Below are positions 18,139-64,000 of a stretch of 64,000 nt of DNA, one piece after another. Within the stretch, counting starts at the first letter, position 1, and each line of letters starts with the position of its first letter. This DNA comes from Octopus sinensis (lineage: Eukaryota). The stretch covers positions 18,476,001-18,540,000 of the forward strand of contig NC_043023.1 of the NCBI RefSeq assembly GCF_006345805.1. Reading direction: 5' to 3'. Under the pieces are notes generated by a model. It saw nothing but the letters and a program-made list of their open reading frames with translations. It searched no databases and had not been told where the DNA came from. The position numbers were made by a program, and so were the translations under genes.

Positions 18139-18182
<44 letters not shown>

Positions 18183-18216
18183 AAAAGAAGTCTTCTTATA
18201 TTGAAATTTATATATC

Positions 18217-18248
<32 letters not shown>

Positions 18249-22206: not shown

Positions 22207-23245
22207 AAAGTCGACCTCGGCGGAATTTGAACTCAGAACGTAATGGCAGACGAAATACGGCCACGCATTTCGCCCGGTGTGCTAACGGTTCTGTCAGCTC
22301 GCCGCCCTGCAAAGTCGACCTCGGCGGAATTTGAACTCAGAACATAACGGCAGACAAAATATGGCCACGCATTTCGCCCGGTGTGCTAACGGTTCTGCCA
22401 TCTCGCCGCTCTGCAAAGTCGACCTCAGCAGAATTTGAACCCAGAACGTAACGGCAGACGAAATACGGCTACGAATTTCGCCCAGCGTGCTAACGGTTCT
22501 GCCAGCTCGCCGCCCTGCAGAATCGACCTCGGCGGAATTTGAACTCAGAACGTAACGGCAGACGAAATACGGCCACGCATTTCACCCGGTGTGCTAACGG
22601 TTCTGCCAGCTCTCCGCCCTGCAGAATCGACCTCGGCGGAATTTGAAGTCAGAACGTAACGGCAGACGAAATACGGCCACGCATTTCACCCGGTGTGCTA
22701 ACGGTTCTGCCAGCTCTCCGCCCTGCAGAATCGACCTCGGCGGAATTTGAACTCAGAACGTAACGGCAGACGAAATACGGCCACGCATTTCGCCCAGCGT
22801 GCTAACGGTTCTGCCAGCTCGCCGCCCTGCAAAGTCGACCTCGGCGGAATTTGAACCCAGAACGTAACGGCAGACGAAATACGGCTACGCATTTCGCCCG
22901 GTGTGCTAACGGTTCTGCCAGCTCGCCGCCCTGCAAAGTCGACCTCGGCGGAATTTGAACCCAGAACGTAACGGCAGACGAAATACGGCTACGCATTTCG
23001 CCCGGTGTGCTAACGGTTCTGCCAGCTCGCCGCCCTGCAGAATCGACCTCGGCGGAATTTGAACCCAGAACGTAACGGCAGACGAAATACGGCTACGCAT
23101 TTCGCCCGGTGTGCTAACGGTTCTGCCAGCTCGCCGCCCTGCAAAGTCGACCTCGGCGGAATTTGAACTCAGAACATAACGCCAGACAAAATACGGCTAC
23201 GCACTTCGCCCGGCGTGCTAACGTTTCTGCCAGCTCGCCGCCTTA
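22207..23245 (-). repeat. Ten tandem 104-bp copies of the SINE tRNA-like head (A-box and B-box in each)
   Basis: TCGACCTC motif at 22211, 22315, 22419, 22523, 22627, 22731, 22835, 22939, 23043, 23147; period exactly 104. Confidence 0.95.
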
Positions 23246-39639: not shown

Positions 39640-39739
39640 NNNNNNNNNNNNNNNNNNNNNNNNNNNNNNNNNNNNNNNNNNNNNNNNNNNNNNNNNNNNN
39701 NNNNNNNNNNNNNNNNNNNNNNNNNNNNNNNNNNNNNNN
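39640..39739. other. Assembly gap (100 N)
   Basis: Read directly. Confidence 1.
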
Positions 39740-42407: not shown

Positions 42408-42479
42408 AGATCTGTTAAACTGGGAAGATTTTGGAAGGCTCCTGATTCGATTTTCCTGATATCATTATAAGCCAAAACT
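42408..42479 (-). CDS. LRR exon 8 of 8 seen: VLAYNDIRKIESGAFQNLPSLTD(L)
   Basis: 72 nt, GTTACAG acceptor, GTAAGT donor, phase 2 on both sides, LRR consensus. Confidence 0.93.
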
Positions 42480-43868: not shown

Positions 43869-44111
43869 CAAAAGAAACCAGGACGCAAAGGATTTTGCGG
43901 TACATATTTTCGGGCTCTATAGAACACCTTATTCTTATATCAATGCTTTTTCTTATACAACAATAAGTTGTTCAATAAAACCCGAAACATATGTACCGCA
44001 AAATCCTTTGCATCCTGTTTTTCTTTTGATACATATATACAATCACCTATACCACTAGCTGGCATATATAGGTGCTTCATTTATCAAGTATTCACCCTGA
44101 ATTTATATATA

Positions 44112-44152
<41 letters not shown>

Positions 44153-44377
44153 TGAATAAAATGGTTCGTCTGATGTGTCAAACTCACATATATAAAAACA
44201 GATACTCATATTCCCTCAGACATGACATTCACAAGCAATCATACGTTCTTATTAGGGGAGAATGAGAATATTGGGAGAGAATAACTGAGAGAGTGGGAAA
44301 GTAAGGATGTGAAGATATTAAATATTAAGAAAGATATTGTCAATGAAATGCTAGCAACAAGTCTGATCTTCACTTAC

Positions 44378-44449
44378 AATGTTGTTAAACTGGGGAGATT
44401 TTGAAAGGATCCGGCTTTGAGTTCTTTTATATCATTGTAATGCAAATAT
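44378..44449 (-). CDS. LRR exon 7 (A type): YLHYNDIKELKAGSFQNLPSLTT(L)
   Basis: 72 nt, CTTACAG acceptor, GTAAGT donor, phase 2. Confidence 0.93.
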
Positions 44450-44592
44450 CTGTAAGATTAAATTAATTTGAAAAGAAATATCATGGAATAGGTATCTGAT
44501 AAAATGACACATATTATGACAAAATAATAAGATGAGGGAAAAAGAAAGTAGATAATGATGAGGATAAATTTCAAGATGATGGAGATAATGGT

Positions 44593-44802
44593 GGCGGTAT
44601 CGTTAGCACGCCGGCCGAAAATGCTTAGCGGTATTTCGTCTGCCGTTACGTTATGAGTTCAAATTCCGCCGAGGTCGATTTGCCTTTCATCCTTTCGGGG
44701 TCTATAAATTAAGTACCAGTTGCGCACCGGGGTCGATATAATCGACTTAATCTGTTTGTCCTCTCTGTGTTTAGCCCCTTGTGGGTAGTAAAGTAATAGG
44801 TA
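44593..44802 (+). mobile_element. tRNA-derived SINE, intronic
   Basis: Same family as the copies at 7-24 kb. Confidence 0.8.
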
Positions 44803-45104
44803 TATGAACGTTGCATATGTTTTGATATATTTTCTTCCGAATCCTATTTTGGGAATATAAGGGAGATAGGTATAAGGAAAGAAGAATAAAATGGTGAAAA
44901 GAGAAAGCAGGAAACAAAGGAAGAAAGAAAGAATAAGAAGGAAGGCGAACAGGAGGAGGAGGAGGAAGAAGCAGGAGGAGGAGGAAATGGAGGACTCAGA
45001 AGAAAGAGAAGGAAATATAGAAGAGTAATAAGATGTAAAAGAAGAGGTAGAGGAAGAAGAGAAAGAAGACGCATGTGTCATGGAGAGAGAAGTGTGGGTG
45101 GGCA

Positions 45105-45550
45105 AACCATCATGGTTTGGGTGCGATAGGGATGGATCAGAGAATTGGGCAGCACGAGTTCCCTGATGTTGGTGCAGGCAGAGGGAATAGCATCACAGCG
45201 CAGTTCTAAGTTGACCAGATCCTAAGACCTCACATTGTGCCATTCTTCGAGCGTCACCATAGCCGCGTGTTCCGTCAGAACAATGCTCTGTGCCACATGG
45301 CCAGGTTCGCCATGGACTCCTGCGTTAGCACAACATCATAATCAGTGCGTGGCCGGCTCTCAGCCCGGATTTGAATACAAGTGGACACCGCTGGGATGAA
45401 ATCCTGAGGAAGCTGAACCAGGGGCTCCCAAGGCCGACAACTCATGTGCCTCATGTTGGGGGCACAGGTACCCCTGACTTTTGTGAACCGCCTCATCCAC
45501 TCCATGTATATGGCCGTTTTGAACACCCAGAGAAAGCATATACGGTATCG
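45105..45550 (+). mobile_element. Tc1/mariner transposase C-terminal fragment, degenerate
   Basis: TIMVW, ILRPHIVPF, QNNALCHMAR (DNA motif decayed), WPALSPDLN, HRWDEI, RLIHSM across frameshifts. Confidence 0.8.
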
Positions 45551-45985
45551 AAGCCCTACAATCTCGATGGACTGGATTTCACCCACTACCAGAACACATG
45601 GCAACGACCCATAGACTGTGGTCAAAGCGCATCCTAGAAATTGATTTCATCAGATATATCAAAATTATTTCTGTGATAATGAAATTGAAACATATTTCAC
45701 AGTGACACAGGTCTTGTGTTTATTTTGCAGATCAGTTTTTGTGTTGTGTGTGTGTGTGTATACATGTACATATGTGTGTGTATATATGTATATGTATATA
45801 TATTATATGCATATATCAAATAGGCGAATGAGTGGCTGAGCAGTAAGAAGCTTGCTAGCGAACCACATGTTTCAGGGTTGAGTCCCACTGATTGGCTCCT
45901 TGAACAAGTGTCTTCTTCTATAGCCTCACGCCGACCAAAGCGTTGTGAGTGGATTTGGAAGATGGAAACTAATAGAAGCCCTTCG

Positions 45986-46077
<92 letters not shown>

Positions 46078-46276
46078 TATATATACACATATATATATAT
46101 ATATATAATATTAATTAGAGACAAAACCACTATTATGCAAATCAAACAAAGAAAGATTTAATCCAACACATAAAAAATTTTATATAATTAAATATAATTA
46201 AGATATCCACTACGATCGTTTCTTGTCACTTCTATTGACATTCATCAGTTTAAAACTTGCAAAGAATGTCTTGAAA

Positions 46277-46322
46277 CCACCTGATGAATGTCAATAGAAG
46301 TGACAAGAAACGATCGTAGTGG
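46277..46322 (+). ncRNA. Minimal type-I hammerhead ribozyme motif (PLE-type)
   Basis: CCAC-CTGATGA-a-TGTCA(atagaag)TGACA-a-GAAA-C(GATC)G-TA/GTGG: stems I and II pair, palindromic tetraloop in stem III, predicted cut 46318/46319. Confidence 0.75.
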
Positions 46323-46504
46323 ATATCTTAATTATATTTAATTTATATAAATTTTTTTATGTATTGGATTAAGTCTTTCTTTGTTTGATTTGCATAATAG
46401 TGGTTTTGTCTCTAATTAATATTATATTATATTTTACTATAAAATTGGATTCAATCCTAAATCTGATTTTCCCTGTAAATTTGGATTTATTCCCTAATAT
46501 TTAT

Positions 46505-46537
<33 letters not shown>

Positions 46538-47249
46538 AATGTTTGTCTGTGTGTGTGTGTGTGTGTTTGTGTGTGTAAGAGATAATAGTGTCACTGAGAG
46601 CCAAAGGTGTCAGGTAATGCTGAATAAGTGATATAGACAGACCATAGTTAAGTTTCAGATTCGGTAATATTGCGAATAAAGGGTTCAACGTTGGTTCTAT
46701 GTCAGCGTGTGTATATACGAATTGTTTGCGTAATGAGATAAAAACCAAGGCTGTATAGATATTAGAGCATTTATAGATAGAAGGTCTTACAGCTGTTTCT
46801 AAGATATTAATTATTAATATCCCTTCATCGGATATTAATAATATCCCTTATTTATCTCTCTCTCTCACTCTCTCTCTCTCTCTCTTTCATTCCTCTCTTC
46901 TTATTTTCAATTTAACCATACTAATACATTCCTTATTTCTAGGTCAGTTTAAATACAAACCTTGAATCTGTTACACTCTGTATAAATTACCTACTGAGAA
47001 TGGCCATCTTTAAGGAATTTTACATTGCTTATAAACTCTATATCTGGATGGATTAATATTAAACTCTGTTGGACTTTTGGATTTTACTCAAAGGATATTG
47101 GAATATTAGACATATATACCATTATGCCCATAAAACGGATTTACGAACTCAATACCCATATATATCTTACATCTATTTTCTTTCCTCCACCTCACTCTCC
47201 ATTTGTATCACATCGAAACTAATTAGGACTTAATTTTTCCTCTCACACC

Positions 47250-47301
47250 GTCTCTGATGAAGGAATATTATTAATGAATATCTTATAAACAGCTGTAAGA
47301 C
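47250..47301 (+). ncRNA. Hammerhead-like motif of a second PLE-type family; variant copies at 51867-51918, 55566-55617, inverted partial 46729-46832
   Basis: GTCT-CTGATGA...AAAC-AGCT-GTA-AGAC. Each copy has a core change (GAAA to TAAA, or CTGATGA to CCGATGA/CCGATAA). Confidence 0.6.
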
Positions 47302-47378
47302 CTTCTATCTATAAATGCTCTAATATCTATACAGCCTTGGTTTTTATCTCATTACGAAAAAAAATTCTTATATATAAG

Positions 47379-47409
<31 letters not shown>

Positions 47410-47602
47410 TTGTAGACAACAAACAGGCGTTTTAGTATAACGCTCGGGAAGTGGAAAAGTCTTTAACGTTTCGAGCCTACGCTCCTCCGCAGGAAGGAAC
47501 ACAGAAAGAAACAAGGAGAGATAATAAAGAAGGAGAGAAAATAAAGAGAAAAAATAAAATTAAAAAAAAAATATGTCTGTGTGTGTGTGTGTGTGTGTGT
47601 GT

Positions 47603-47895
47603 GGAGGCGCAATGGCCAGTGGTTAGGGCAGTGGACTCGCGGTCGTAGGATCGCGGTTTCGATTCCAGACCAGGCGTTGTGAGTGTTTTTTGAGCGAAAC
47701 ACCTAAAGCTCCACGCGGCTCCGGCAGGGGGTGGTGGTGATCCCTGCTGTACTCTTTCGCCACAACATTCTCTCACTCTTTCTTCTGTTGGCCTGCTCTC
47801 TTCGCCAGCGGAGTGGCATCATTTGAAGGCTAAAACAATGCGAAGCGCATTGTGACCAGCGATGTGTAGCAACATCTGATAGCCTGGTCGATCCC
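47603..47895 (+). mobile_element. tRNA-derived SINE of a further family
   Basis: GGAGGCGCAATGGCCAGTGGTTAG A-box and GGTTTCGATTCC B-box followed by a non-tRNA body. Confidence 0.75.
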
Positions 47896-48214
47896 GGTGA
47901 TATCCATATATATACATATAAATACACACACACATATATATACACATATATACATATATATAAAGGTGGGTGAGCAAAATGATAACCCTCATGCATCACA
48001 CACCCATATATACCAAATGTATACCAACACACTCTCATATTCCCTTTCAGAGACATTCAAAGATATTCACAAACAATCACGCGCTCTTACTAAGGGAGAG
48101 TAAAAATATAGGGAGAGATTAGTTGAGAGAGCAATACAAGGACGATGTGAAGAAATTAAATACTTCGGAATATATCATCAATGAAATGTTATCACTGGGA
48201 ATGTTCAAACTTAC

Positions 48215-48286
48215 ATCGCATCTAACCTAGGAAGATTCTGGAAGGCTCCTGCATGGATTTCCTTAATATCATTTTCATGCAAAACC
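48215..48286 (-). CDS. LRR exon 6 (B type): VLHENDIKEIHAGAFQNLPRLDA(I)
   Basis: 72 nt, ATTACAG acceptor, GTAAGT donor, phase 2. Confidence 0.93.
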
Positions 48287-49120
48287 CTGTAATATAAAAT
48301 TCAGCTGAGCAAAAATTGTATGCAATACATGTGGTTAAAATTAATTAGGTGATGGTAAAAATGGATGTAGATTAAAGCGATGATGATAGCGGCGTTATTA
48401 GTGATTAATGAAAGGAAGAGGGGGAGAAGGAATATGGTGTTAGCGATGATGATGATGATGGTATTATCATAGTCATCGTGGTGGGAGAGTGAAGCTGATT
48501 CTTCTTATAATGATGTTCATTAGTATATTTATGGTGATGATGATCATGATATTGAGGCTGATCATAATGGTAGAGATGCTTTATGATGAAGAATTATGTT
48601 GATAACGAAAATAATGATGACGGTGATTATGACGAGGGCGGCGACATTATGATGATGGTGACGGTGGTGGTGATAACAACAGTACAAGTATTAGACGAGT
48701 CAAAAAGGGCAATCAGTGTTATTCTAAAGGTAAACACAGTCCATGCTTTGCAGACTGACTTAGAAACACATTGATATTCTCGCATCGATTCATGCATAAA
48801 CAACGATAAAGAAGCACACACACACACACACATACACACACACACATACACACAGGCCCACAAACACACACAGAGGCCCACACACAAGGTTCAAGACAGC
48901 AGAGGCAAAGGGCACTGATGAAATTTGCACCGAACATGACATCAGATTGCATATCCCACATTGTACAGTCGATGCAGCTAAAACGCGTGTAGGTCCAGTA
49001 AAAGATGGTGTTAATAACTATTAAATAACAGTAAAGATGTGAAAAAGTACGCTCTTCTTATTAATACTAAATATATATGTAAATATCTATCTATCTATCT
49101 ATCTATCTATCTTCTTTACT

Positions 49121-49217
<97 letters not shown>

Positions 49218-49336
49218 TATAATCATAATTGTTAAATTTTATGTTTCTAGTTCGACAATAGAGTTTATTATAGGTAAACTTATTATGTTTAAAAATATTG
49301 TTTAAATATTTCTGTTTATATTTTAGATGTTTAATT

Positions 49337-49399
49337 CACCTGAAGATTGACTGTAACTCGAATTATTATGAATTGTACAGCCATGAAACGATCGTAGTG
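49337..49399 (+). ncRNA. Minimal hammerhead motif, relative of the 46277 copy
   Basis: CAC-CTGAAGA-[TGACTGTA...TACAGCCA]-GAAAC-GATC-GTA-GTG; downstream ~200 bp similar to 46330-46500. Confidence 0.6.
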
Positions 49400-50299
49400 T
49401 TACTCTTTATGATTTATTAATCTTACAATACTTTTGATATTTTAAAATAATATAAATTAATTTTATGTATTGGCTTATGTTTTTCATTGTGTGATTTGCC
49501 TAATAGTGGTTTTATCTCTAATATAATATATATATTTATACTATAAAATTGGATTTAATGCTAAATCTGATATTTCCCTGTAAGTTTGGATTTATTCCCT
49601 AATATTTAATTATATATATATATATATTATAATATATATATATATATACGAAAAGAAATAATATTTGGTTCTTTTTAAGGATACAAAATGGTTTATAGGA
49701 CTGCAAATGTAAGTGCTCAATTGTAAATGAGATTAAGATAAAGAAACATTGATCATAGAACAAACATCAAATGTGAGTCGACGATTTTATATATAACACC
49801 ATACCTCGATCATGTAGTCATATGTAAATATTACCATGGTCTTTGAACATATAAAATATACATTTACATAAAAAAAGAGAAGGTAAAAATATATATGCGA
49901 ATAAAATAAAAAATATATATAGAACAGCCTATCAAAAAGGTAAATATAAAAAACTAAAAATTCCTAAGAATTATAAAGCGTGTCACACTACAAAAAAAAC
50001 TAATAAACTAAGATGAAACAAAATATCAAACGACTAAAAATATTTTTAAATGTTCTTTTTTACTCCCTTCACAAAACGTACGTCCAAAATATTCAATTCT
50101 TAAAACCATGGTAGGTTACAGTCCATGAGCAAGGAGAGTTCCACAAGGTCAATTCAAACAAACCTATGGCCATTTCGATTATATTAAAGTGTATAACGGC
50201 AATGTCCCTCTCTTCAGGATGAACAGGAACCAGGAAACACGCACAGAGCAAAACTAAAATGTTCATATAACGCCACATGGCTAATTGTAAGATAAACCC

Positions 50300-51240
50300 G
50301 TCATTGCAGCAAAATTTTCTAACACATAAAGAAACACCGAATTATTTTATTGCTAAACATGCAGGTGGCTGTTGTTAAGAGAAATTTATACTCGCTGGTT
50401 TCAAAACCCTATAAAATTAACCATTATTTACTACATCTACTTTTATTTCTAAACTCTTTCAGAAAAGTAGACGGAAACATATGGGTGTAAAAAGGGATCA
50501 CCTCAGTAACTTTATTTAAGCCCAAAAGACTTAAGGATGGCAAGGGATTCCCTTACACATAACCTATTGAAATTAACTGTGAAATAAGGAGCCCTCGAAA
50601 TAACAGACCATTCAAGAGAATATCTTTTAGTTATTCCTCTTTAAACTCTGTATATAAGAATCAAATGTAGTAGAATAACAGTATTCATCGTTGGAAAACG
50701 AATTCATGTGAGCCCTATACATAGTCTTAAGATTTACAGCACTGCCTATATAAAACTTATCCAAATTAACATCCTCTTTAACAAAGCATTTATATATTGT
50801 TTAATAGAGAGGCAAAGCCAATCAAGGAGACATAATACAGTGTTTCTACAATTATACGATTTACCAAAGCCATTCCTAACTTTATTACTACAACTGACAT
50901 TATTTGTCTGGCTTCCCACCTTCTTTCCTTCAGATATCCCATTACTAGGATTCGATAAGACCGGTGGGAGCAAATTGTTTGTAGCACTAAACTTAGGCAT
51001 ATAAGAGAATATCTGGCCAGTAGCAGGGTTTTCCAGCAGAAGAATACTTCCTCAGCCCTTTCCCAATTAACTTGCTTCTATTAAGAGACGCAATAATGGA
51101 GGTCATAGTTGGCGTTACTGAGTAAGAGAATTTGATGGAAGACTTATTGCAAATGCTGCAGTATTTATGATTGTTTGGGAAAATCTTCTTCAGAATCTTA
51201 AACAACAATTTGGTCAAGGTTCTTTCTCTAAGAGAAAAAG
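50300..51240 (-). mobile_element. Penelope-like element 3' fragment (linker plus GIY-YIG C-terminus), intronic; paralog ~53660-54600
   Basis: FPNNHKYCSICNKSSIKFSYSVTPTMTSII, YNCRNTVLCLLDWLC, WSVISRAPY match PLE FPxxHKLxKIFNRNxxKxSYS, CNCRxxxxCPL and WxIxxxAxxY motifs. Confidence 0.75.
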
Positions 51241-51660
51241 TCAGGGGCGAACCATATTGTATCCGGTATGCTAGAACGTGAGTTCTTGCTTTTATTGTCT
51301 CCTCTCTTTCACTATTTCGCTTCCTCTATCTATTCCTAACATCTTTACATATGTCACACCTTACAATCTCGATGGACTGGATCCACCCACTACCAGAACA
51401 CATGATAACGACCCATATATATATATTTACATGCGTGCATAAAATGGTTCGTCTGATGTGTCACACTCACGTATATAAAAACAGATACTCTTATTCCCTC
51501 AGAGATGACATTCATAAGCAATCATACGTTCTTATTAGGGGAGAGAGTGAATATTGGGAGTGAACAAATGAGAGAGTGGGAAAGTAAGGATGTGAAGATA
51601 TTAAAAATTTAGAAAGATATTGTCAATGAAATGCTAGCAACAAGTCTGATCTTTACTTAC

Positions 51661-51732
51661 AATGTTCTTAAACTGGAGAGATTTTGGAAGGATCCGGCTT
51701 TGAGTTCTTTTATATCATTGTTATTCAAATAT
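51661..51732 (-). pseudogene. LRR exon 5 (A type) lacking its splice acceptor: YLNNNDIKELKAGSFQNLSSLRT(L)
   Basis: Open 72-nt LRR with GTAAGT donor, but the upstream side reads ...CACCACCGTC with no AG; ~310 bp deleted relative to 55123-55433. Confidence 0.8.
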
Positions 51733-52011
51733 GACGGTGGTGGCGACTAAAACGCGACAGCATAATGATGATGGATGGTGAGCATGGAGGTGATGATTTA
51801 GTAGAAGTATTAGATGAATAGGAAAACTTGTGACATACAAGAATAAATTGTATTTCCTCTCACACCGTCTCCGATGAAGGGATAATATTACTTAATATCC
51901 CAGAAACAGGTGTAAGACCTTCTATCTATAAATGCTCTAATATCTATAGAGCCTTGGTTCTATCTCATTACGAAAAAAATTCTTATATATATGAATATAT
52001 ATATATATTAT

Positions 52012-52064
<53 letters not shown>

Positions 52065-52318
52065 TTGTGTGTGTGTATGTTTGTAGACAACAAATATGTG
52101 TATTAGTATAACGCTCGGGAAGTGAAAATTCTTTAACTTTTCGAGCCAACGCTCCTCCACAGGAAAGATCACAGAAAGAAACAAGGATAGATAAAAAGGA
52201 GTGAAAATAAAGAAAATAGAAAGAAAAAATAAAGTGAAAAAGTGAAAAGAGAATATATAAATATATTTATATATATATATATACAAATATATATATACAT
52301 AAATATACATAAATATAC

Positions 52319-52407
<89 letters not shown>

Positions 52408-52705
52408 CATATTTATACATATCTATACATATATATATACACATATATACATGTATATAAGTGTGGGTGTGCAAAGTGATTACCCACATGCATCACACAC
52501 CCGTATATACCAAATGTATACCAACACACTCTCATATTCCCTCTCAGACACATTCGAAGCTATTCACAAACAATCTCTTACTGCGGGAGAGTGAAAATAT
52601 AGGGAGAGATTAGTTGAGAGAGCAATACGAGGATGATGTGAAGAAATTAAATACTTCGGAATATATCATCAATGAAATGTTATCACTGAGACTGTTCAAA
52701 CTTAC

Positions 52706-52777
52706 AAATCTACTAAGTTGGGAAGTTTCTGGAAGGCTTCTACATGGATTTCACTAATATTATTTTCACGTAAATAC
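52706..52777 (-). CDS. LRR exon 4 (B type): YLRENNISEIHVEAFQKLPNLVD(L)
   Basis: 72 nt, ATTACAG acceptor, GTAAGT donor, phase 2. Confidence 0.93.
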
Positions 52778-55050
52778 CTGTAATATAAAATTCAGCTGAG
52801 CAAAAATTGTATGCAATACATGTGGTTAAAATTAATTAGATGATGGTAAAAATGGATGCAGATTAAAACGATGATGATAGCGGCGTTATTAGTGATTAAT
52901 GAGAGGAAGAGGGGGAGAAGGAATAGAAGGAATATGGAGAACGAGTTAGCGATGATGACGTTGGTATTATTATAGGCATCGTGGTGGGAGAGTGAAGCCG
53001 ATTCTTCTTATAATGATGTTCATATTTGTCTTTATTTATGGAAATTTAAGGATTTATAGGACTGCAAAAAAGAAGTGCTCAATTGTAAATGAGATTAAGA
53101 TAAAGAAACATTGATCATAGAACAAACATCAAATGTGAGTCGACGATTTTATATATAACACCATACCTCGATCATTTAGTCATATGTAAATATTACCATG
53201 GTCCTTAAACATATATAAAATATACATTTACATAAAAACACAGAAGGTAAAATTATATATGCGAATAAAATAAAAATATATAGAACAGCCTATCAAAAAG
53301 GTAAATATAAAAGACTAAAAATTCCTAAGAATTATAAAGCGTGTCATGCTACAAAAACAACTAATAAACTAAGATAAAACAAAATATCAAACGACTAAAA
53401 ATATTTTTAAAAGTTCTTTTTTACTCCCTTCACAAAACGTACGTCCAAAAACTTCAATTCTTAAAACCATGGTAGGTTACAGTCCATGAGCAAAGAGAGT
53501 TCCACAAGGTCAATTCAAACAAACCTATGGCCATTTCGATTATATTAAAGTGCATAACGGCAATGTCCCTCTCTTCAGGATGAACAGGAACCAGGAAACA
53601 CGCACAGAGCAAAACTAAAACGTTCATACAACGCCACATGGCTAATTGTAAGATAAATCCGTCATTGCAGCAACATTTTCTAACACATAAAGAAACACCG
53701 AATAATTTTATTGCTAAACATGCAGGTGGCTGTTGTGAATAGAAATTTATACTCGCTATTTCAAAACCCTATAAAATTAACCATTATTTACTACATCTAC
53801 TTTTACTTCTAAACTCTTTCGGAAAAGTAGACGGAAACTTATGGCTGTATAAAGGCATCACCTCAGCAAATTTATTTAAGCCCAAAAGACTTAGGGATGG
53901 CAAGGGATTCCCATACTCATAACTTTCACTTATTTATATTAACTCTGAAATAAGGAGCCCTCGAAATAACAGACCATTCAAGAGAATATCTTTTAGTTAT
54001 TCCTCTTTAAACTCTGTATATAAGAATCAAATGTAGTAGAATAACAGTATTTTTCGTTGGAAAACGAATTCATGTGAGCCCTATACATAGTCTTAAAATT
54101 TACAGCACTGCCTATATAAAACTTATCCAAATTAACATCCTCTTTAACAAAGGATTTTTATATTGCATTAGTAGAGATACAGAGCCAATCAAGGAGACAT
54201 AATACAGTGTTTCTACAATTATACGATTTACCAAAGCCATTCCTAACTTTATTACTACAACTAACATTATTTGTCTGGCTTCCCACCTTCTTTCCTTCAG
54301 ATATCCCATTACTGGGGTTCGATAAGACTGGTGGAAGCAAATGGTTTGTAGCACTAAACTTAGGCATATAAGAGCTTACCTGGCCAGTACCAGGGTTTTC
54401 CAGCAGAAGAATATTTATTCAGCCCTTGCCCATTTAATTTGCTTCTATTAAGAGACGCAATAATGGAGGCCATAGTTGGCATTACTGAGTAAAAGAATTT
54501 GATGGAAGACTTATAGCAAATGCTGCAGTGTTTATGATTGTTTGGGAAAATCTTCTTCAGAATCTTAAACAACAGTTTGGTCAAGGTTCTTTCTCTAAGA
54601 GAAAAATGCAGGGGCGAACCATCTTATATCCCGTATGCTAGAACGTGAGTTCTTGCTTTTATTATCTCTTCTTTTCCACTATTTCGCTTCCTGCGTCTAT
54701 TCCTAACATCTTTACATATGTCACGCCCTACAATCTCGATGGACTGGATCCACCCTCTACCAGAACACATGATAACGACCCATATATAAATATATATATA
54801 TATATATTTATACATATATATGCGTGCATAAAATGGTTCGTCTGATATATCACACTCACATATATAAAAACAGATGCTCTTATTCCCTCAGACATGACAT
54901 TCACAAGCAACCATACGTTCTTATTAGGGGAGACTGAGATTATAGAGACTGAACAAGTGAGAGAGTGGGAAAGCAAGGATGTGAAGATATTAAAATATCT
55001 AGAAAGACATTGTCAATGAAATGCTAGCAACAATTGTGATATTTACTTAC

Positions 55051-55122
55051 AATACTCTTAAATTGGGGAGATTTTCGAAGGATCCGGCTTTGAGTTCTTT
55101 TATGTCATTATCATACAATAAT
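55051..55122 (-). CDS. LRR exon 3 (A type): LLYDNDIKELKAGSFENLPNLRV(L)
   Basis: 72 nt, CTTACAG acceptor, GTAAGT donor, phase 2. Confidence 0.93.
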
Positions 55123-55692
55123 CTGTAAGATTAAATTCATTTGAAAAGAAATATCATGGATTAGGTATCTGATAAAATGACACATATTATGACAAAATAA
55201 TAAGATGAGGGACAAAGAAAGTAGGTACTGATGAGGATGATTTTCATGATGATGGTGATAATGGAGTCGGTAGTAGTGATAAATATGAGGCGGAGGAATG
55301 TACTGGTAGTGGTGATGAAGATACTGTCATGCGGTTGAAGGTGGGAATAATAATATTGGTTATGATGAAGACAATAATAAGTTAGACAATGTTGATGCTT
55401 GAGTACAGAAGAAGATGACGAAGATCATGATGACGGTGGTGGCAACAAAAACGCGACAGCATAATGATGGTGGATGGTGAGCATGGAGGTGATGATTTAG
55501 TAGAAGTATTAGATGAAAAGGAAAACTTGTGACATACAAGAATAAATTGTATTTCCTCTCACACCGTCTCCGATAAAGGGATATTATTACTTAATATCCC
55601 AGAAACAGGTGTAAGACCTTCTATCTATAAATGCTCTAATATCTATAGAGCCTTGGTTTTTATCTCATTACGAAAAAAATTCTTATATATAC

Positions 55693-55734
<42 letters not shown>

Positions 55735-56304
55735 GTGTGTGTGTGTGTGTGGGTGTGTGTGTATGTTTGTAGACAACAAACAGGTGTATTACTTTAACGC
55801 TCGGGAAGTGAAAAATCTTTAACGTTTCGAGTCTAGGCTCCTCCACAGAAAGGAACACAGAAAGAAACAAGGATAGATAATAAAGAAGGTGAAAAAATGA
55901 AGAAAATAAAAATAAAAAATAAAGTGAAAGAATAAAAAGAGAATATATATATATATATATATAATATATATATATATATATACAAATATATATACATATT
56001 TATACATATCTATACATATATATATATATATATATATACCCATATATACATATATATAAACATGCGTAAGCAAAATGATTACCCTCATGCATCACACACC
56101 CATATATACCAAATGTATACCAACACACTTTCATATTCCCTCTGAGACACATTCAAAGATATTCACAAACAATCTCTTACTGAGGGAGAGTGAAAATATA
56201 GGGAGAGATTAGTTGAGAGAGCAATACAAAGACGATGTGAAGAAATTAAATACTTCGGAATATATCATCAATGAAATGTTATCACTGAGAGTGTTCAAAC
56301 TTAC

Positions 56305-56376
56305 ATTTCTCTTAAGCTGGGAAGATTCTGGAAGGCTCCTGCATGGATTTCCTTAATATCATTTTTATGCGAAACC
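56305..56376 (-). CDS. LRR exon 2 (B type): VSHKNDIKEIHAGAFQNLPSLRE(I)
   Basis: 72 nt, ATTACAG acceptor, GTAAGT donor, phase 2. Confidence 0.92.
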
Positions 56377-56993
56377 CTGTAATATAAAATTCAGCTGAGC
56401 AAAAATTGTATGCAATACATGTGGTTAAAATTAATTAGGTGATGGTAAAAATGGATGTAGATTAAAGCGATGATGATAGCGGCGTTGTTAGTGATTAATG
56501 AGAGGAAGAGGGGGAGAAGGAATATGGTGTTAGCGATGATGACAATGGTATAATCATAGGCATCATGGCGAAGCCGACTCTTCTTATAATGATGTTCATT
56601 GGTATATTTATGGTGATGATGATCATGATATTGAGGCTGATGATAATGGTAGAGATGCTTTATGATGAAGAATTATGTTGATAACGAAAACAATGATCAA
56701 GTAATCGATGTTGTTGGTTAATTCTTATATATAAGTATAAATATAGTAAATCCAAACAAGAAAGCACAAAAAAACACAACAACGCGAGGACGTACAACAA
56801 ATATAGTATTATTGGACGCTCAGGAAAGAAGGAAAGAAGGAGGGTTTAGCGTTTCGAGCGGAGCTCTTAATCGGAAACATAGAAAAAGGAAAGATTTAAG
56901 GAAGGGAAGAAAGGAAAAAAAATCTCCAACGGTACACACGAGGTCACATTTTGAAAGACCGGTAGGAAAAGTGTGAAGAAAGATGTTTTCAAA

Positions 56994-57032: not shown

Positions 57033-57790
57033 GTGTGTGCTTGTTTGTAGATAACAAACAGGTGTATTACTATATCGCTCGGGAAGTGAAAAATCTTTAA
57101 AGTTTCGAGCCAACGCTCTTCCACAGGAAGGAACACAGAAATAAACAAGGAAAGATAATAAAGAAGGTGAGAAAATAAAGAAAATAAAAAGAGAAAATAA
57201 AGTGAAAAAAATAAAAAAAGTGCTTAATTGTAAATGAGATTAAGATAAAGAAACATTGATCATAGAACAAACATCAAATGTGAGTTAACGATTTTATATA
57301 TAACACCATACCTCAATCATTTAGTCATATGAAATTACTACCATGGTCCTTAAACATATAAAATATACATAGACATAAAATCAGAGAAGGTAAAATTATA
57401 TATGCGAATAAAATAATAAATATATAGAACAGCCGATCAAAAATGTAAATATAAAAAACTAAAACTTCCTAAGAATTATAAAGCGTGTCACGCTACAAAA
57501 AAAATCTAATAAACTAAGATAAAACAAAATATCAAACGACTAAAAATATTTTTAAAAGTTCTTTTTTACTCCCTTCACAAAACGTACATCCAAAATGTTC
57601 AATTCTTAAAACCATGGTAGGTTACAGTCCATGAGCAAAGAGAGTTCCACAAGGTCAATTCAAACAAACCTATGGCCATTTCGATTATATTAAAGTGCAT
57701 AACGGCAATGTCCCTCTCTTGAGGATGAACAGGAACCAGGAAACACGCATAGAGCAAAACTAAAAAGTTCATACAACGCCACATGGCTAA

Positions 57791-58544
57791 TCTCTCTTTA
57801 TATAAACGGTAGTTTGTCTGTCTGTGTGTCTGTCAGTTTGTACCCTCACCCTGACCACGGTTTTCAACTGATTCTGATGAAACCTGACACACACATAGAC
57901 CAATCTCATAATTCAAAACTAACGCAGTGACACTTCTGAAACGTTTCCCCAGTTTTGAAAAAATCGATAAATTCGACATGGGGTTGAAAATCTAAGCTTT
58001 TTATATTCAACACATTTTCTGTTGTAGTTTTCGCAACTTGCAATCGAATTTCACCAAAGTCATGGTGAAGCTTAATGTTACCCTAGCAAACTTAATTCTG
58101 GCGTTAGTTTTCCGTGCAATACCTTACCCTCAGAAAGAATCGATAAAATCATGCCATTTTGGGAAATCGCGTTTAAATTCATGATGACATATTTTCGACA
58201 ATATCTTTCATAAATTGGCAGGAATCTTTTTAAAATTCACAGCGAGCATCATGTCTGCTCCAAGGAGGTATATGGCTATTTTATTCCAATAGGATACTTT
58301 ATTACTGGAAAAAATCGGTTAATTAAATCATATGTGACACACATAGCAAACCGATTTATGTATTAAACACGAACGAGAGGCTGTCTAAGGGACGCAACTC
58401 GACATTTTTATAGCCCAAAGGGACAGCTAGGAACGTCATATACACATGCGCCTTCGCTCCGTAGAGGGAAAGGACTAGATTGGGATTAGTCGTTGCCTAC
58501 TAGGGGCTCTTACATACCCGGGCAACGCCGGGATATGCTGTTAG
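57791..58544 (+). mobile_element. Non-autonomous Helitron-like insertion
   Basis: Absent at the paralogous sites (~50283, ~53644). Starts TC; subterminal hairpin CCCGGgcaacgCCGGG; ends CTGTTAG; no target-site duplication. Confidence 0.6.
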
Positions 58545-58619: not shown

Positions 58620-61600
58620 GGCAACTTGAATTTCTACAACCAACTTGAATTCCTTTTATGGTATTCTAAAACCTTCCCTTACCCTCATTCCTAAAACTAA
58701 AAAATTCTTATAGCAGTCTGACGTTGGATTTGCAAGCTTTCTAGCATACATTGCATTCAACGGTCTACACAGACATATAGGCAAAATAGTTGGAGGTTCG
58801 TTTTCCATGCGTTCGCAGATGTGATTTGAGGCCAGCAAAAGACAGGCATGATATGTCACAGACTGTACATACAAAAGGTCATTGTCATTCACCTTTTCGA
58901 TCGTTACATTCTTCCTTAGATCTCGTTTGAGTCTTATTTGCGTTATCCTCACCCCACTCCACACCTTTGTTCGCCATCCAACTCGATCCGAAGCAAGGGT
59001 TTCTATATCTTCTGGAACCATTCCAAGTGACTTCATAGTAGTCCTTATACAGTCCTTAAACCTCTTTTTAGATTTACGCCAATAGCATTCCCCCTCTGCA
59101 AACTCACCATGAAACAGCTGTTTCGGCATGCGTTCATCTGCCGTTCGAACAATACGGCTACACCATCTCAATTGGTTCCTCAAAATCATAGCTTTAATCG
59201 AGGTGATGCCTGCAGATGCAAGGACATCTGTGTTTGGAATAAAAGAACTCCATTTAATTTTTAAAATGCGCTGAAGGCATTTTTGGTGGAATTGTTGTAA
59301 CAGTTTAAAATACCTTTCATAACAAGTCCAAGTTTCACAGGAATACAACAGGGATGGTAAGACAAATGATATTAAAGTCACAGCTTTGTATTCTTATTTA
59401 TATTTCGCTGGTACCAAACGCGTTACACCAAGCCACCAAATGCTTTTGCTGCCCTTTGAATTCGCTGCTGTATTTCTGTATCAAGATTTCCATCATTTTG
59501 AAGAGAGCCTCCAAGTTAGACGAACGAATCAACAGCCGCGAGTAACTTTCCCTTGACAAAAATTTTAGTGTGGTTACAAACAGCACCACACACAGGGTGA
59601 TGCATAACAACTGTTTTTTTTTCAAGTCGATGGTCAAACCAAAATCAACACAAGCAGAGACAAATGCAGATACCAGAGACTGCAGACCTGTTTGAGAATT
59701 ACTGACAAGATCGCAATCTTCAGCATACAAAAGTTCCCTAATGAATGAAGTAAAAACCTTCGTTTTCAATTTCAGTCTGGTCAGATTATAAACATTCCCT
59801 GTTGTTCGATATTTTATGTAAATACCCTCCTCAGAGTTTTAAAAAGCAATATATATTGCTGTTGCAATATATATTGCAAAGAGGGTGGGTGCATAAAGGT
59901 CACCTTGCTTTACTCCATGTTCCACAACAAAAGATTTCGATGGCCTACCACTATAATTAACTCTAGCTTTTATATCTTAATGCAAAGCTCTGACCATATT
60001 TACAAATTTTTCAGGGCAACATTTTCCCTCAGAATTAGTCACAGAGCCTTTCGATTAACAGTTTCGAATGCGTTGCTCAAATCAACAAAGCAATGGTATA
60101 GAGGAAAATTCTGTTTAATGCACTTTTCTAGTAATTGTCTGACAGTAAAGATACAATCATCCTGGAGGAACGAAAACCACTCTAAGATTCAGACACTATA
60201 TTTGGAACTATGAAGATATTTAAACGCTCTAACCACAGACGAAACCGAAATCCCACGAAAATTACCACACAGATCCTTTGGCTCCGATTTCTTCGAGGAG
60301 ACTAAAATGGCATCAATCCAAGGACTGAGAAAGAAGTGTATTGTGCCTACGTTTTGCTTTTCTAAAAGTAGATTATGAATTTCTGCTGATCTATCTGAGT
60401 ACCAGTCACTGGATTTAGGAGATTTAAATCCTATTGACGAACTTGCAGCCTGAAATACTTTTGTTCTGAAATCTTCCAATAGATTGTTTGGGTCAAGATT
60501 GATACTTTCTATAGCATCGTGGAATCTTTGCAAGTTGCTTGATCAATTAATGTTTACAAATTTTAACTTTTTAAGTACGTTAGGACAAGACTGTCGATAT
60601 TGTAGGCATTATCGGAAAATCTATTTTTCCACGCACTAGATAATGGTCAGTTCAGCTTTCTGCTCTACTCATGACCTGGATGCTAGAAACGTCTTTCATA
60701 TCACGTTTCCTGATCAGAATATTATCTATGAGATGCCAGTGCTTAGATCTTGGGTACAACCAGGTGGTTTTATATTTATTTATCTGCTTAAACAGACTGA
60801 TGGTGACAACCAGATTATTCTCAGAACAAATCGTCAAAAGAGCTACTCCATTTTTATTGCATTATCCAATCTCACATCGACCTAAACCAGGCTATGAAAC
60901 GTAGTCCTTTCCACCTCTTACATTGAAATCTCCCAATATAACCGGCTTGTCAGAAATTGGTACTTTCCTCAAAATTGTGCTAGATCGTCAAAAATCTGTC
61001 CTACAGTTTCATCAGAATGGGACATTGTTGGCGTATAAATACTGACAACGGTAAGAAACCTACCATTTGTCAGTTTAATATGGCATGACGTGGTTCGTTC
61101 AGATATACCACTTGGAAGCTCTGCAATGGAGGATACTAATGAATTCTTGAGAGCAAATCCAACACCAGATTCTCTACGTTGACCCTTGTGTATGCCTCTC
61201 CAAAAGATAGTATATCCATAAGTAGGTTCATTTACTTGACCCTTACCAGAGAGACCAATTTCAAAGAGCGCAACTATATCAAGAAAATATTTCTTGAGCT
61301 CACATGCAGTAAGTGCAGTACACCTTTCTGGCTTCTTGTTGAAATTATCATCGAGACGTGTGCGCACATTGCAGAAACCAAAATTCAAAGGATGTCTATT
61401 TTGCTTTTCCTTGAAGATTGTTTGACCACAGTGGCAGGAGGACGACCGGGTCCAGCCTGTGATACACTGGGACACCTGCCGAGCTAGACCTGTTCCACTG
61501 ACGTTCCCAATCCTTTTTTGCCATTTACTGAATCTGTTTGTGACATCTTAGAGTAAGTTACAAGTACATTTTTAGGTTTCTGCCAACCAACCAATTCAAT

Positions 61601-62698: not shown

Positions 62699-62770
62699 AA
62701 ATATCTTAAATTGGGAAGATTTTGGAAGGTTCCTGGTTTGATTTCGTTTATATGATTGGAATACGTTGTC
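62699..62770 (-). CDS. LRR exon 1 of 8 seen: TTYSNHINEIKPGTFQNLPNLRY(L)
   Basis: 72 nt, GTTACAG acceptor, GTAAGT donor, phase 2. Confidence 0.9.
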
Positions 62771-64000
62771 CTGTAACATAAATTTCAGTTGATTAGAAAT
62801 TGTGTAGAACAATATCGGTGATAAAATGTCACGCATTGTGGATAAAGAACTGGATGATGGAGAAAGGGTAACTAGATTATAATGACGTTGAAGATCATGA
62901 TGATGGGTATGATGGTGGCGATGTTAGTGGTAAATATTATATGAAGGAGGAGGAGGGGGAGGGGGAAGAGGGGAGGAGAAGGAAGAATGTGGTGATGGTG
63001 TTGATGACGATGATGTTATGATGCTAATGATGGGATTAATTAACTTGGTTGTAATTATTTGTGAGGGTGTTGTCGATTATGGTTCAGGATACTGATGATG
63101 ATGATGTTGATGGTGATGGTGTTATGATGATGAAGCAAACGATGATGAACTATACGATATTGATGATTAAAATACAGATGGCAAAGACCCTGGGGTCATT
63201 CATGATGACAAGAACGGGGACGATTAGGGTTAGGGTGAGGGTTAGGTCATGGCGTCGATGGTGGTGACATAAATAGTGCAAGTATTAGTTGAGAAGAAAA
63301 GAATAAAAATAGTTGAAAGAGTAAGAAGGAGAAAAAGGAAAAGAAGTTGAAGAAGAATGAAGAGAAAAGAAAGAACAGAAGAAGAAGAAGAAGAAGAAGA
63401 GAAGACGAAGAAGGAGAACACATGTTAATACCGTTACATACAAGAATCTATGCACAATATGAGTGTGTGTGTGTGTGTGTGTGTGTGTGTCGAAATAGAC
63501 ACACTCTTACATAGATCTCTATATATGTATACACATGTATACATTTCCGTGTGTGGGCTCGCATGGGGGGGGGGCAGAAGTATGTAGAATTGGGGTGCTC
63601 AATTGTAAATGAGATTAAGATAAAGAAACATTGATTAAAGAACAAACATCAAATGTGAGTCAACCATTTTATATATAACACCATACCTCAATCATTTAGT
63701 CATATGTAAATATTACCATGGTCCTTAAACATATAAAATATACATTTACATAAAAACAGAGAAGGTAAAAATATATATGCGAATAAAATAAAAAATATAT
63801 AGAACAGCCTATCAAAAAGGTAAATATAAAAGACTAAAAATTCCTAAGAATTATAAAGCGTGTCATGCTACAAAAACAACTAATAAACTAAGATAAAACA
63901 AAATATCAAACGACTAAAAATATTTTTAAATGTTCTTTTTTACTCCCTTCACAAAACGTACGTCCAAAAAGTTCAATTCTTAAAACCATGGTTTGTTACA

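What the first reader, a model, noticed from the sequence alone, without database searches (positions are those of the whole stretch)
44378..56376. Substitutions between duplicate LRR exons are mostly non-synonymous and cluster on the concave face
Seen (hand count): exon 2 vs 6 differ at 9 nt, 8 in amino-acid-changing codons, with the central 46 nt identical. Exon 7 vs 5: 4 non-synonymous, 1 synonymous. Exon 7 vs 3: 10 nt in changed codons, 2 synonymous. Changes concentrate at the exon ends, which form the xxLxLxx beta-strand, while NDIKE..AG.F.NL is kept. Known: these positions form the ligand-binding surface and are hypervariable in VLRs and plant LRR receptors. Inference: diversifying selection for ligand specificity.
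Basis: partly seen in the sequence, partly recalled or inferred. Interest (0 to 1): 0.8.

Follow-up and report, generated by a model that had tools for sequence, protein, structure and literature searches.

The report
Octopus LRR exons diversify binding face
Recently duplicated 72-base exons of an Octopus sinensis leucine-rich-repeat receptor gene differ almost only in the five codons lining the protein's binding groove, at about seven times the rate of the surrounding introns; this is a familiar signature of receptor diversification, not a new kind of system.

Summary
Its exon numbers follow gene order on the minus strand: exon 2 = 56305-56376, up to exon 7 = 44378-44449. Its main argument fails. 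About 80% of sites in these AT-rich codons are non-synonymous, so 22 of 26 differences in changed codons is what chance gives (p=0.38). Whole-exon dN/dS for its three pairs is 0.73-1.0.

Its second point, clustering at the exon ends, is real and stronger than it knew. The exons lie in a tandemly triplicated two-exon unit whose introns differ by 5-9%. The five solvent-exposed beta-strand codons (LRR positions 2,3,5,7,8) differ by 20-53% at nucleotide level (40-53% in five of six pairs). The rest of the exon sits at intron level unless exon X4 is involved. Non-synonymous change at those codons is 6.9x the intron expectation (P=8e-9).

The gene is Octopus sinensis "LRRC15-like" (P0133). It is probably the ectodomain of an LRR-adhesion GPCR from a known octopus-specific expansion.

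Diversifying selection is the best reading, but it is not proven. Synonymous changes are also somewhat raised, and many codons carry 2-3 changes. Block import by micro-conversion therefore remains a live rival. Two of the compared exons (X4, X5) are absent from the annotated mRNA.

The parts
62699..62770 (-). Residues 156-179 of P0133.
   Evidence: 100% tblastn match to P0133
56305..56376 (-). It carries Ser at the normally Leu core position 6.
55051..55122 (-).
   Evidence: 100% match
52706..52777 (-). Splice sites and reading frame are intact, but the annotated product P0133 skips it. It differs by 1 aa from repeat R3 of P0133, which lies outside the window.
51661..51732 (-). Its 3' splice acceptor is missing: about 300 nt present in the sister unit (55123-55429) are absent here. 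It is skipped in P0133 and is probably a dead exon.
48215..48286 (-).
44378..44449 (-).
   Evidence: 100% match
42408..42479 (-).
53022..56640 (-). Duplication unit III (approximate bounds). Holds X2 and X3. Introns are 92% identical to unit II.
49661..53022 (-). Duplication unit II (approximate bounds). Holds X4 and X5.
44100..49660 (-). Duplication unit I (approximate bounds). Holds X6 and X7. Extra sequence of about 2.6 kb lies between the two exons.
57213..57791 (.). One of four copies of a block of about 575 nt that starts each unit. The other copies are at 49711-50285, 53068-53646 and 63595-64000. Copies are 94-97% identical.

Best explanation
What it is. The window covers part of an Octopus sinensis gene, whose NCBI product is 'leucine-rich repeat-containing protein 15-like' (P0133). 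Its extracellular LRR domain is built from one 24-residue repeat per 72-nt phase-1 exon.

Shown.
- A unit of two exons (B then A, 3.4-5.6 kb including introns) was copied in tandem at least three times, recently enough that the introns still differ by only 5-9%.
- Since then the copies have changed mainly in the codons for the five solvent-exposed residues of the LxxLxLxxN beta-strand. These codons sit at the two ends of every exon.
- That change has run at about seven times the intron rate.
- The hydrophobic framework and the convex side stayed at background.

Inferred.
- This is adaptive diversification of the concave ligand-binding face. Each new repeat adds a differently lined segment to the binding groove.
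- The raw variation came from point mutation and probably also from short-tract sequence exchange with other LRR exons of this large family.
- The protein is most likely the N-terminal ectodomain of an LRR-adhesion GPCR, so the changes would retune what that receptor binds.
For: Gene and exons.
- Exon anatomy, splice sites and reading frames.
- Tandem units with alignable introns.

Exon against intron.
- Exon divergence is 12.5-25% against 4.9-7.3% for introns in 4 of 6 pairs (Fisher p from 0.015 to 8e-6).
- Concave codons differ at 40-53%, against 4-7% for the rest of the exon and 5-9% for introns.
- Pooled expectation from intron tree lengths: concave non-synonymous 16.9 observed against 2.44 expected (P=8e-9); other codons 12.0 against 8.7, not significant.
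- Mask-sliding control over the introns: 0 of 3630 placements reach the observed count in four pairs.

Site class and position.
- pN/pS is 1.9 and 2.5 at concave codons against 0.75 and 0.29 elsewhere.
- The same direction appears in O. sinensis locus L001 (5.6 against 0.77) and O. bimaculoides locus L002 (1.5 against 0.46).
- Several L001 and L002 duplicate pairs show concave codons above intron divergence.
- At protein level over all 12 repeats of the gene, 18 of 24 within-type changes fall at 5 of 24 positions (p=2e-8).

Against simple homogenisation.
- Intron flanks within about 60 nt of the B exons are nearly invariant: 0/62 upstream and 2/70 downstream.
- Homogenisation of the region would therefore have erased the exon-end differences too.

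Structure and identity.
- The AlphaFold model of P0133 has pLDDT 92-98 over the LRRs, with strands at positions 3-5 across each exon junction.
- The model of paralogue P0034 has pLDDT 91, and its best Foldseek matches are LINGO-1, AMIGO-1, NGL, VLR, LGR4 and Slit2.
- X1, X2, X3, X6, X7 and X8 are each found exactly, as whole repeats, in P0133. tblastn shows 100% for X1, X3, X7 and X8. For X2 and X6 the only mismatch is the split junction codon.
- The C-terminal part of P0133 is 87-99% identical to GPS-containing octopus 'adhesion GPCR G6-like' proteins.
- The neighbouring gene combines LRR, GPS and 7tm_2 domains.
Against: - Whole-exon dN/dS is 0.73-1.17 in five of six within-type pairs.
- pN/pS above 1 at concave codons is not significant by itself.
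- Synonymous change is also raised there, at 2.1 observed against 0.58 expected (P=0.12).
- By my reading, about five of six synonymous or silent-step changes sit inside or next to the non-synonymous patches.
- Several codons carry 2-3 changes (AGA to GAT, GAA to GCG, TAT to TTA).
- The 3' patches are followed by extra differences at intron positions +7 to +17. This looks like replacement of short blocks rather than codon-by-codon selection.
- Intron divergence is over-dispersed, with variance/mean of about 2-5, which hints at some conversion.
- In an older family member (L003, O. bimaculoides), concave codons are only as diverged as the introns: 0.20-0.33 against 0.23-0.28.
- X4 and X5 are not in the annotated mRNA, and X5 has no acceptor.
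- X2 has Ser at a core Leu position.
- There is only one genome, six short exons, and no expression or population data.
Confidence: 0.55

Rival explanations
1. Micro-conversion without selection. Short tracts of about 10-30 nt are copied from the many other LRR exons of the family into the exon ends. Homology with distant paralogues exists only in the exon and the splice-site flanks of about 12 nt. Distant paralogues differ most at the unconstrained concave codons. Import therefore raises divergence there, with no adaptive drive.
For: - Differences come in dense patches: 7 of 13 nt at the 3' end of X6 vs X2, and 6 differences in the first 19 nt (5 in the first 13) at the 5' end of X3.
- Multi-hit codons are present, and silent changes lie inside the patches.
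- Synonymous change at concave codons is 3.6x expectation.
- Splice flanks (tttatgttccag / gtaagttgaa) are conserved across loci and species and could anchor exchange.
- Intron divergence is over-dispersed.
- Between the old A and B types, concave pN (0.61) equals framework pS (0.62). Over the long term these sites look merely unconstrained.
Against: - No donor for any variable end exists in the window or in loci L001 and L002 at 2 or fewer mismatches.
- Whole-exon import from a donor as diverged as A is from B would bring framework synonymous changes at about the same per-site rate as concave changes. The observed values are 0.12 against 0.47.
- Every copy in two exon types has acquired different patches within a time in which introns changed by about 6%. 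That needs a very high conversion rate, or selection to fix the imports.
Confidence: 0.2
2. Old repeats with concerted evolution. The repeats and their distinct concave residues are ancient and held by purifying selection, each repeat contacting its own part of a fixed ligand. Unequal crossing-over and gene conversion keep homogenising the introns and exon cores, which makes the copies look young.
For: - The odd-one-out unit differs between the A-exon and B-exon regions.
- Intron divergence varies from 1% to 13% per 100 nt along the unit.
- Silent changes cluster with the variable patches.
Against: - It needs conversion tracts that repeatedly stop within a few bases of both exon edges, plus separate tracts shorter than 46 nt for the exon core.
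- Identity runs uninterrupted from intron into exon core in the B exons.
- Whole 3.4-kb units align end to end at 92%. That is what simple recent duplication gives.
Confidence: 0.12
3. Neutral decay or artefact. The compared exons are unused pseudo-exons drifting freely, or the tandem copies are an assembly artefact such as uncollapsed haplotypes.
For: - X5 has lost its acceptor.
- X4 and X5 are skipped in P0133.
- X2 has Ser at core position 6, and X4 has Glu at Gly17 and Lys at Asn21.
- Whole-exon dN/dS is about 1.
- The assembly is a draft, with a 100-N gap at 39640-39739.
Against: - Drift cannot exceed the neutral rate, yet concave codons run at 6.9x the intron rate.
- The strongest contrasts involve exons that ARE in the mRNA, namely X2 vs X6 and X3 vs X7.
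- All exons keep their frame, and all but X5 keep both splice sites.
- Copies differ by 5-9% plus kilobase indels and lie in a regular tandem order, with a further unit upstream in the protein. That is not a haplotig pattern.
Confidence: 0.05

Closest known systems
Plant LRR resistance-gene clusters (Cf-4/Cf-9, Xa21, NLR LRR domains): hypervariable solvent-exposed xxLxLxx residues. Recalled from my own knowledge (Parniske 1997; Michelmore & Meyers 1998), not tested here.
   Same: - Tandem duplication of LRR-coding units.
- Variation concentrated on the solvent-exposed beta-strand positions.
- Conserved framework and flanks.
- A mixture of sequence exchange between paralogues and diversifying selection.
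   Different: - Here the duplicated unit is a pair of exons inside one animal gene, not whole genes.
- No immune role is shown.
- Ka/Ks above 1 is not significant by itself. The evidence comes from the comparison with introns.
Octopus-specific adhesion GPCR expansion ('group 3' of Ritschard et al. 2019, PMC6408891)
   Same: - An octopus lineage-specific, clustered family with GPS and 7TM domains, in which some members carry LRRs.
- That paper's branch tests indicated accelerated evolution.
- The C-terminal part of P0133 is 87-99% identical to octopus 'adhesion GPCR G6-like' proteins, and the neighbouring gene has LRR, GPS and 7tm_2.
   Different: - That study found no individual sites under selection and did not examine the LRR exons.
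- The annotated P0133 model stops before any GPS or 7TM domain, so membership is not shown for this gene.
Jawless-vertebrate variable lymphocyte receptors (VLR)
   Same: - The same 24-residue LRR fold with an LRRNT cap. VLRs are among the best Foldseek matches.
- Diversity sits on the concave beta-sheet positions.
   Different: - VLR diversity is somatic. It is assembled by a gene-conversion-like process from cassettes without splice sites into an incomplete germline gene.
- Here the exons are ordinary spliced germline exons with AG/GTAAGT boundaries.
LGR and glycoprotein-hormone-receptor type gene structure (one LRR per phase-1 exon of about 72 nt). Recalled from my own knowledge.
   Same: - One repeat per symmetric 72-nt exon, so exon gain, loss or skipping keeps the reading frame.
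- LGR4 is among the best structural matches.
   Different: - LGR repeats are ancient and conserved between species. They are not recent tandem copies with near-identical introns.
- The 7TM domain of this family is of the adhesion/secretin type (PF00002), not the rhodopsin type.
Names given by automatic annotation: LRRC15-like, LRRC4-like, TLR5, Slit-like
   Same: Extracellular 'typical' LRRs with an N-terminal Cys cap.
   Different: - Identity to any of these families is only 25-40%.
- No TIR domain, no Ig domain and no EGF domain is found in P0133.
- The names reflect generic LRR similarity, not orthology.

Membership tests
Extracellular 'typical' 24-residue LRR domain | LxxLxLxxNxI/L consensus repeated with a 24-residue period | tested here: met
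   All 8 exons fit the consensus. N9, I11, F19, L22 and L1 are invariant over 20 family exons. Pfam LRR_8 hits P0133 with E=5.8e-65.
Extracellular 'typical' 24-residue LRR domain | Curved solenoid with one short beta-strand per repeat on the concave side | tested here: met
   The AlphaFold model of P0133 has pLDDT 92-98 over residues 30-300, with strands every 24 residues at LRR positions 3-5. The P0034 model has pLDDT 91.4, and Foldseek gives probability 1.0 to LINGO-1, AMIGO-1, NGL, VLR, LGR4 and Slit2. Side-chain exposure itself was not measured.
Extracellular 'typical' 24-residue LRR domain | N-terminal Cys-rich cap (LRRNT) after a signal peptide | tested here: inconclusive
   P0133 residues 31-53 hit PF01462 at 25.2 bits, just below the 25.8-bit cut-off. 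That exon lies outside the window.
Sites under diversifying (positive) selection | dN/dS significantly above 1 at the candidate sites | tested here: inconclusive
   Whole-exon dN/dS is 0.73-1.17, with one pair at 4.2 that is not significant. Concave codons give pN/pS of 1.9-5.6 in the window and L001, and 1.5 in L002. Only about 2 synonymous changes occur there, so significance is not reached. No codon-model likelihood test was run.
Sites under diversifying (positive) selection | Replacement rate above an independent neutral rate | tested here: met
   Concave non-synonymous change is 16.9 observed against 2.44 expected from flanking-intron divergence (P=8e-9). The mask-sliding control agrees.
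Sites under diversifying (positive) selection | Signal not produced by recombination or gene conversion | not testable with these tools
   This needs the whole genome to look for donors. None is found in the window, L001 or L002. Patchiness and multi-hit codons leave conversion open.
Adhesion GPCR (octopus group 3 expansion) | GAIN/GPS domain and secretin-type 7TM domain in the same product | tested here: inconclusive
   P0133 has no GPS or 7tm_2 hit and ends at '...ELFDEMAVW'. The near-identical proteins P0217 and P0250 continue past that point into HormR-like and GPS regions. The neighbouring gene has LRR, GPS and 7tm_2. The rest of the gene is outside the window.
VLR-type somatically assembled LRR receptor | Incomplete germline gene flanked by cassettes that lack splice signals | tested here: not met
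   The cassettes here are canonical exons (AG|72 nt|GTAAGT) joined in an annotated mRNA.
Toll-like receptor (name given to paralogue P0191) | Cytoplasmic TIR domain | tested here: not met
   P0133 has no TIR hit. No TIR family (PF01582 or PF13676) appears among the precomputed Pfam accessions listed for P0191.

The most novel reading that the evidence does not exclude
The tandem 72-nt LRR exons may be a germline cassette library. All of them are phase 1-1, so any subset stays in frame.
- A paralogue already has three annotated isoforms that differ by single LRR exons (P0006, P0014, P0017).
- The intact exon X4 is skipped in P0133.
- Failure to splice any exon gives an immediate TAA stop.

Combinatorial exon inclusion, together with fast-evolving concave faces, could give one octopus adhesion-GPCR gene many ectodomains of different specificity. 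That would be a Dscam-like strategy built from VLR-like modules.
Probability: 0.1. Interest if true: 0.75.

Novelty: new member of a known kind. Interest (0 to 1): 0.4.

Why it matters
Octopuses have lineage-specific expansions of adhesion GPCRs expressed in suckers, skin and the axial nerve cord. The ligands of these receptors are unknown. The earlier selection scan (PMC6408891) found accelerated branches but no selected sites.

If the present reading holds, it points to a concrete target of that acceleration, the concave face of the LRR ectodomain. It also points to a concrete mechanism of innovation, the intragenic duplication of two-exon cassettes followed by rapid re-lining of the groove. 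That gives a short list of residues to mutate or swap in binding assays.

The work also has a methodological lesson. In AT-rich short exons, 'mostly non-synonymous' carries no information. The co-duplicated introns are the informative control.

Tried and rejected
- Regex scans for LRRNT and LRRCT motifs in all six frames gave only microsatellite noise.
- tblastn with family N-termini and with the P0133 C-terminus found neither end of the gene in the window.
- The first homologue search with the spliced window exons missed the gene's own product. Its best hits were 35-54% identical. The exhaustive representative search with paralogue P0034 found it as P0133.
I did not pursue it, and used the database proteins P0034 and P0133 instead.
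- DNA for P0034 is not on record. The P0133 gene spans 229 kb, so its DNA was not returned. The four upstream repeats R1-R4 could therefore be used only as protein.
- A search for donors of the variable exon ends in the window, L001 and L002 at 2 or fewer mismatches found none.
- My first exon-versus-intron test used flanks that ran into microsatellites and overstated intron divergence. I redid it with masking.
- I first read X4's 12-13 private changes as a recent burst on one lineage. I rejected that reading because repeat R3 of P0133 shares them all but one. X4 belongs to a separate exon subtype, B2.
- Replication in L003 (O. bimaculoides, older duplicates) failed. Concave codons there are about as diverged as the introns.
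- Literature searches found no description of these LRR exons.

Full report
WHAT IS THERE. The window is eukaryotic, rich in microsatellites and retrotransposons. On the minus strand it carries eight 72-nt exons. Each is bounded by AG| and |GTAAGT, is in phase 1-1, and encodes one 24-residue leucine-rich repeat. In gene order they are:
- X1 62699-62770
- X2 56305-56376
- X3 55051-55122
- X4 52706-52777
- X5 51661-51732
- X6 48215-48286
- X7 44378-44449
- X8 42408-42479

The codon for LRR position 4 is split across each intron. Positions 1-3 therefore end one exon, and positions 5-8 begin the next.

THE OBSERVATION. All three hand counts are exact.
- X2 vs X6: 9 nt differ, 8 in changed codons, and 46 central nt are identical.
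- X7 vs X5: 4 non-synonymous and 1 synonymous.
- X7 vs X3: 10 in changed codons and 2 synonymous.

The counts do not show an excess of replacement change. Only about 13.8 of 69 sites are synonymous. Pooled, 22 of 26 against an expected 80% gives p=0.38. Nei-Gojobori dN/dS is 0.77, 1.00 and 0.73.

The clustering is real. An identical run of 46 nt or more, given nine random differences, has P=3e-4.

THE DUPLICATION. The exons alternate between two types: B (NDIKEIHAGAF) and A (NDIKELKAGSF).
- Self-comparison shows a tandem unit of two exons plus introns.
- Unit II (about 49661-53022) and unit III (about 53022-56640) align end to end at 92%.
- Unit I (about 44100-49660) aligns in blocks at 87-93%.
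- X5 has lost its acceptor. About 300 nt present at 55123-55429 in unit III are missing beside it.

THE KEY TEST. Because the introns were duplicated with the exons, they give a local neutral yardstick.
- After masking simple repeats and gap edges, introns differ by 4.9-9.1%.
- Exons differ by 12.5-25% in four of six within-type pairs (Fisher p from 0.015 to 8e-6).
- I split the exon by the a-priori structural class, the codons of LRR positions 2,3,5,7,8 (15 nt). These differ at 40-53% in five of six pairs.
- The other 57 nt differ at 4-7%, which is intron level, unless X4 is involved (18-19%).
- Using intron tree lengths as the expectation, concave non-synonymous change is 16.9 observed against 2.44 expected (6.9x, P=8e-9).
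- Concave synonymous change is 2.1 against 0.58 (P=0.12).
- In the remaining codons, non-synonymous change is 12.0 against 8.7 and synonymous change is 4.0 against 2.2. Neither is significant.
- I slid the same 15-nt mask across the aligned introns, without any masking. It never reaches the observed count in four pairs (0/1925, 0/948, 0/482, 0/275). It does so in 6/400 placements for X6 vs X4 and 17/175 for X7 vs X5.
- The intron within about 60 nt of the B exons is almost invariant: 0/62 upstream and 2/70 downstream. The contrast at the exon borders is therefore sharp.

SITE CLASSES AND REPLICATION.
- pN/pS at concave codons is 1.9 within types and 2.5 between A and B. Elsewhere it is 0.75 and 0.29.
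- Related octopus loci show the same direction. L001 (O. sinensis VCDQ01005429) gives 5.6 against 0.77. L002 (O. bimaculoides CM046629.1) gives 1.5 against 0.46.
- Several of their duplicate pairs have concave codons well above intron divergence. One example is 6/15 against 29/323, with 1/57 in the rest of the exon.
- An older family gene in O. bimaculoides (L003) does not replicate this. Concave codons differ at 0.20-0.33, introns at 0.23-0.28, and the framework at 0.12-0.18. Those sites therefore look merely unconstrained there.

IDENTITY OF THE GENE.
- An exhaustive HMMER search with paralogue P0034 returned P0133 (461 aa). This is 'leucine-rich repeat-containing protein 15-like [Octopus sinensis]', on a 21.3-Mb contig of GCA_006345805.1.
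- Its sequence contains X1, X2, X3, X6, X7 and X8 exactly, in that order, and omits X4 and X5.
- Upstream of X1 it has four more repeats, of types C, A, B2 and A. The B2 repeat differs from X4 by one residue, and the last A repeat differs from X5 by one residue. Unit II is therefore a copy of an upstream unit outside the window.
- Over the four exon types of the whole gene, 18 of 24 amino-acid changes fall at the five concave positions (p=2e-8).
- The gene spans 229 kb, so its DNA could not be fetched. The overlapping gene on the other strand encodes LRRs, GPS and 7tm_2.
- After the LRRs, P0133 has an LRRCT-like Cys motif. It then has a region 87-99% identical to octopus 'adhesion GPCR G6-like' proteins that carry GPS and 7TM domains.
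- This fits the octopus-specific adhesion-GPCR expansion described by Ritschard et al. 2019. That study reported LRRs in 5 of 22 members, accelerated branches, and no identifiable selected sites.
- P0133 itself has no GPS, 7TM, TIR or Ig hit. Membership is therefore probable, not shown.

STRUCTURE.
- AlphaFold models of P0034 (pLDDT 91) and P0133 (pLDDT 92-98 over the LRRs) give a regular solenoid. One strand falls every 24 residues at LRR positions 3-5, which is across each exon junction.
- The best Foldseek matches are LINGO-1, AMIGO-1, NGL-2/3, VLRs, LGR4 and Slit2.
- That the x positions of LxxLxLxx line the concave binding surface is established knowledge (Kobe & Kajava 2001). I did not measure exposure.

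INTERPRETATION. Neutral drift, relaxed constraint or pseudo-exon decay cannot exceed the intron rate, so they do not explain a seven-fold excess. Homogenisation by gene conversion would have erased the end differences along with everything else.

Two readings remain.
- The first is positive diversifying selection on the binding face.
- The second is import of short blocks from other family exons.
- For block import: changes are patchy (7 of 13 nt at one exon end); several codons carry 2-3 changes; silent changes sit inside the patches; and extra differences follow at intron positions +7 to +17.
- Against pure import: no donor is found in the sequence at hand. In addition, framework synonymous sites did not change in step with concave sites, as whole-exon import from diverged paralogues would require (0.12 against 0.47).

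I judge a combination the most likely, as in plant LRR gene clusters. Variation would come from mutation and exchange, and would be fixed by selection for new binding surfaces. My confidence is 0.55.

VERDICT. This is a new example of a well-known pattern, in a poorly annotated octopus receptor family. It is not a new kind of system.

Noticed in passing
all LRR exon 3' ends, e.g. window 56305, 48215, 44378 (minus strand); L001 34970-34974; L002 11911-11915 and 19861-19865: Each exon ends with two bases of a codon followed by GTAAGT. Failure to splice therefore reads xxG TAA, an immediate stop. Three NCBI gene models of the family (P0006, P0035 and the 181-aa gene in L002) end on exactly that TAA. 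They are probably truncated models or intron-terminated transcripts.
   Followed up: partly
window 51733-51760 compared with 55123-55429: Exon X5 has lost its 3' splice acceptor through a deletion of about 300 nt relative to the sister unit. The nearest upstream AG would add 14 nt and shift the frame.
   Followed up: partly
window 52706-52777: Exon X4 has intact splice sites and an intact reading frame, but it is absent from the annotated product P0133. A near-identical repeat (1 aa different) is used further upstream in the same protein.
   Followed up: partly
L001 (O. sinensis VCDQ01005429) exons at 17471, 26535, 31972 and 34899: Three annotated isoforms of a paralogue (P0006, P0014, P0017) differ only by inclusion of single 72-nt LRR exons. 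Cassette-exon use appears to occur in this family.
   Followed up: partly
window 48287-48348 and 48143-48214, and the matching flanks at 52778+ and 56377+: The intron within about 60 nt of the B-type exons is almost invariant among the three copies (0/62 and 2/70 variable), against about 10% further out. The family-wide motifs tttatgttccag and gtaagttgaa are conserved across loci and species.
   Followed up: no
window 49711-50285, 53068-53646, 57213-57791, 63595-64000: A block of about 575 nt, 94-97% identical in four copies, marks the start of each duplication unit. The last copy is cut by the window end and implies a further unit beyond 64000. That agrees with the extra repeats in P0133.
   Followed up: partly
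window 58656-61475 (minus strand): ORF fragments inside the 6.3-kb intron between X1 and X2 look like a degraded non-LTR retrotransposon, but none hits Pfam. Clear reverse-transcriptase ORFs (RVT_1) lie at 2020-2982 and 30919-33258 on the plus strand.
   Followed up: partly
window 9239-11895 and 13090-15749; 11839-13519 and 17405-19083; 22205-23242; 39640-39739: Two local segmental duplications at 98-99% identity, a satellite with a 104-nt period, and an assembly gap of 100 N.
   Followed up: no
the locus around P0133 in GCA_006345805.1 (not in the window): A 1088-aa gene on the opposite strand spans more than 249 kb, overlaps the P0133 gene, and combines LRRs, GPS and 7tm_2. The region is a cluster of LRR-adhesion GPCR genes with very long introns.
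   Followed up: no
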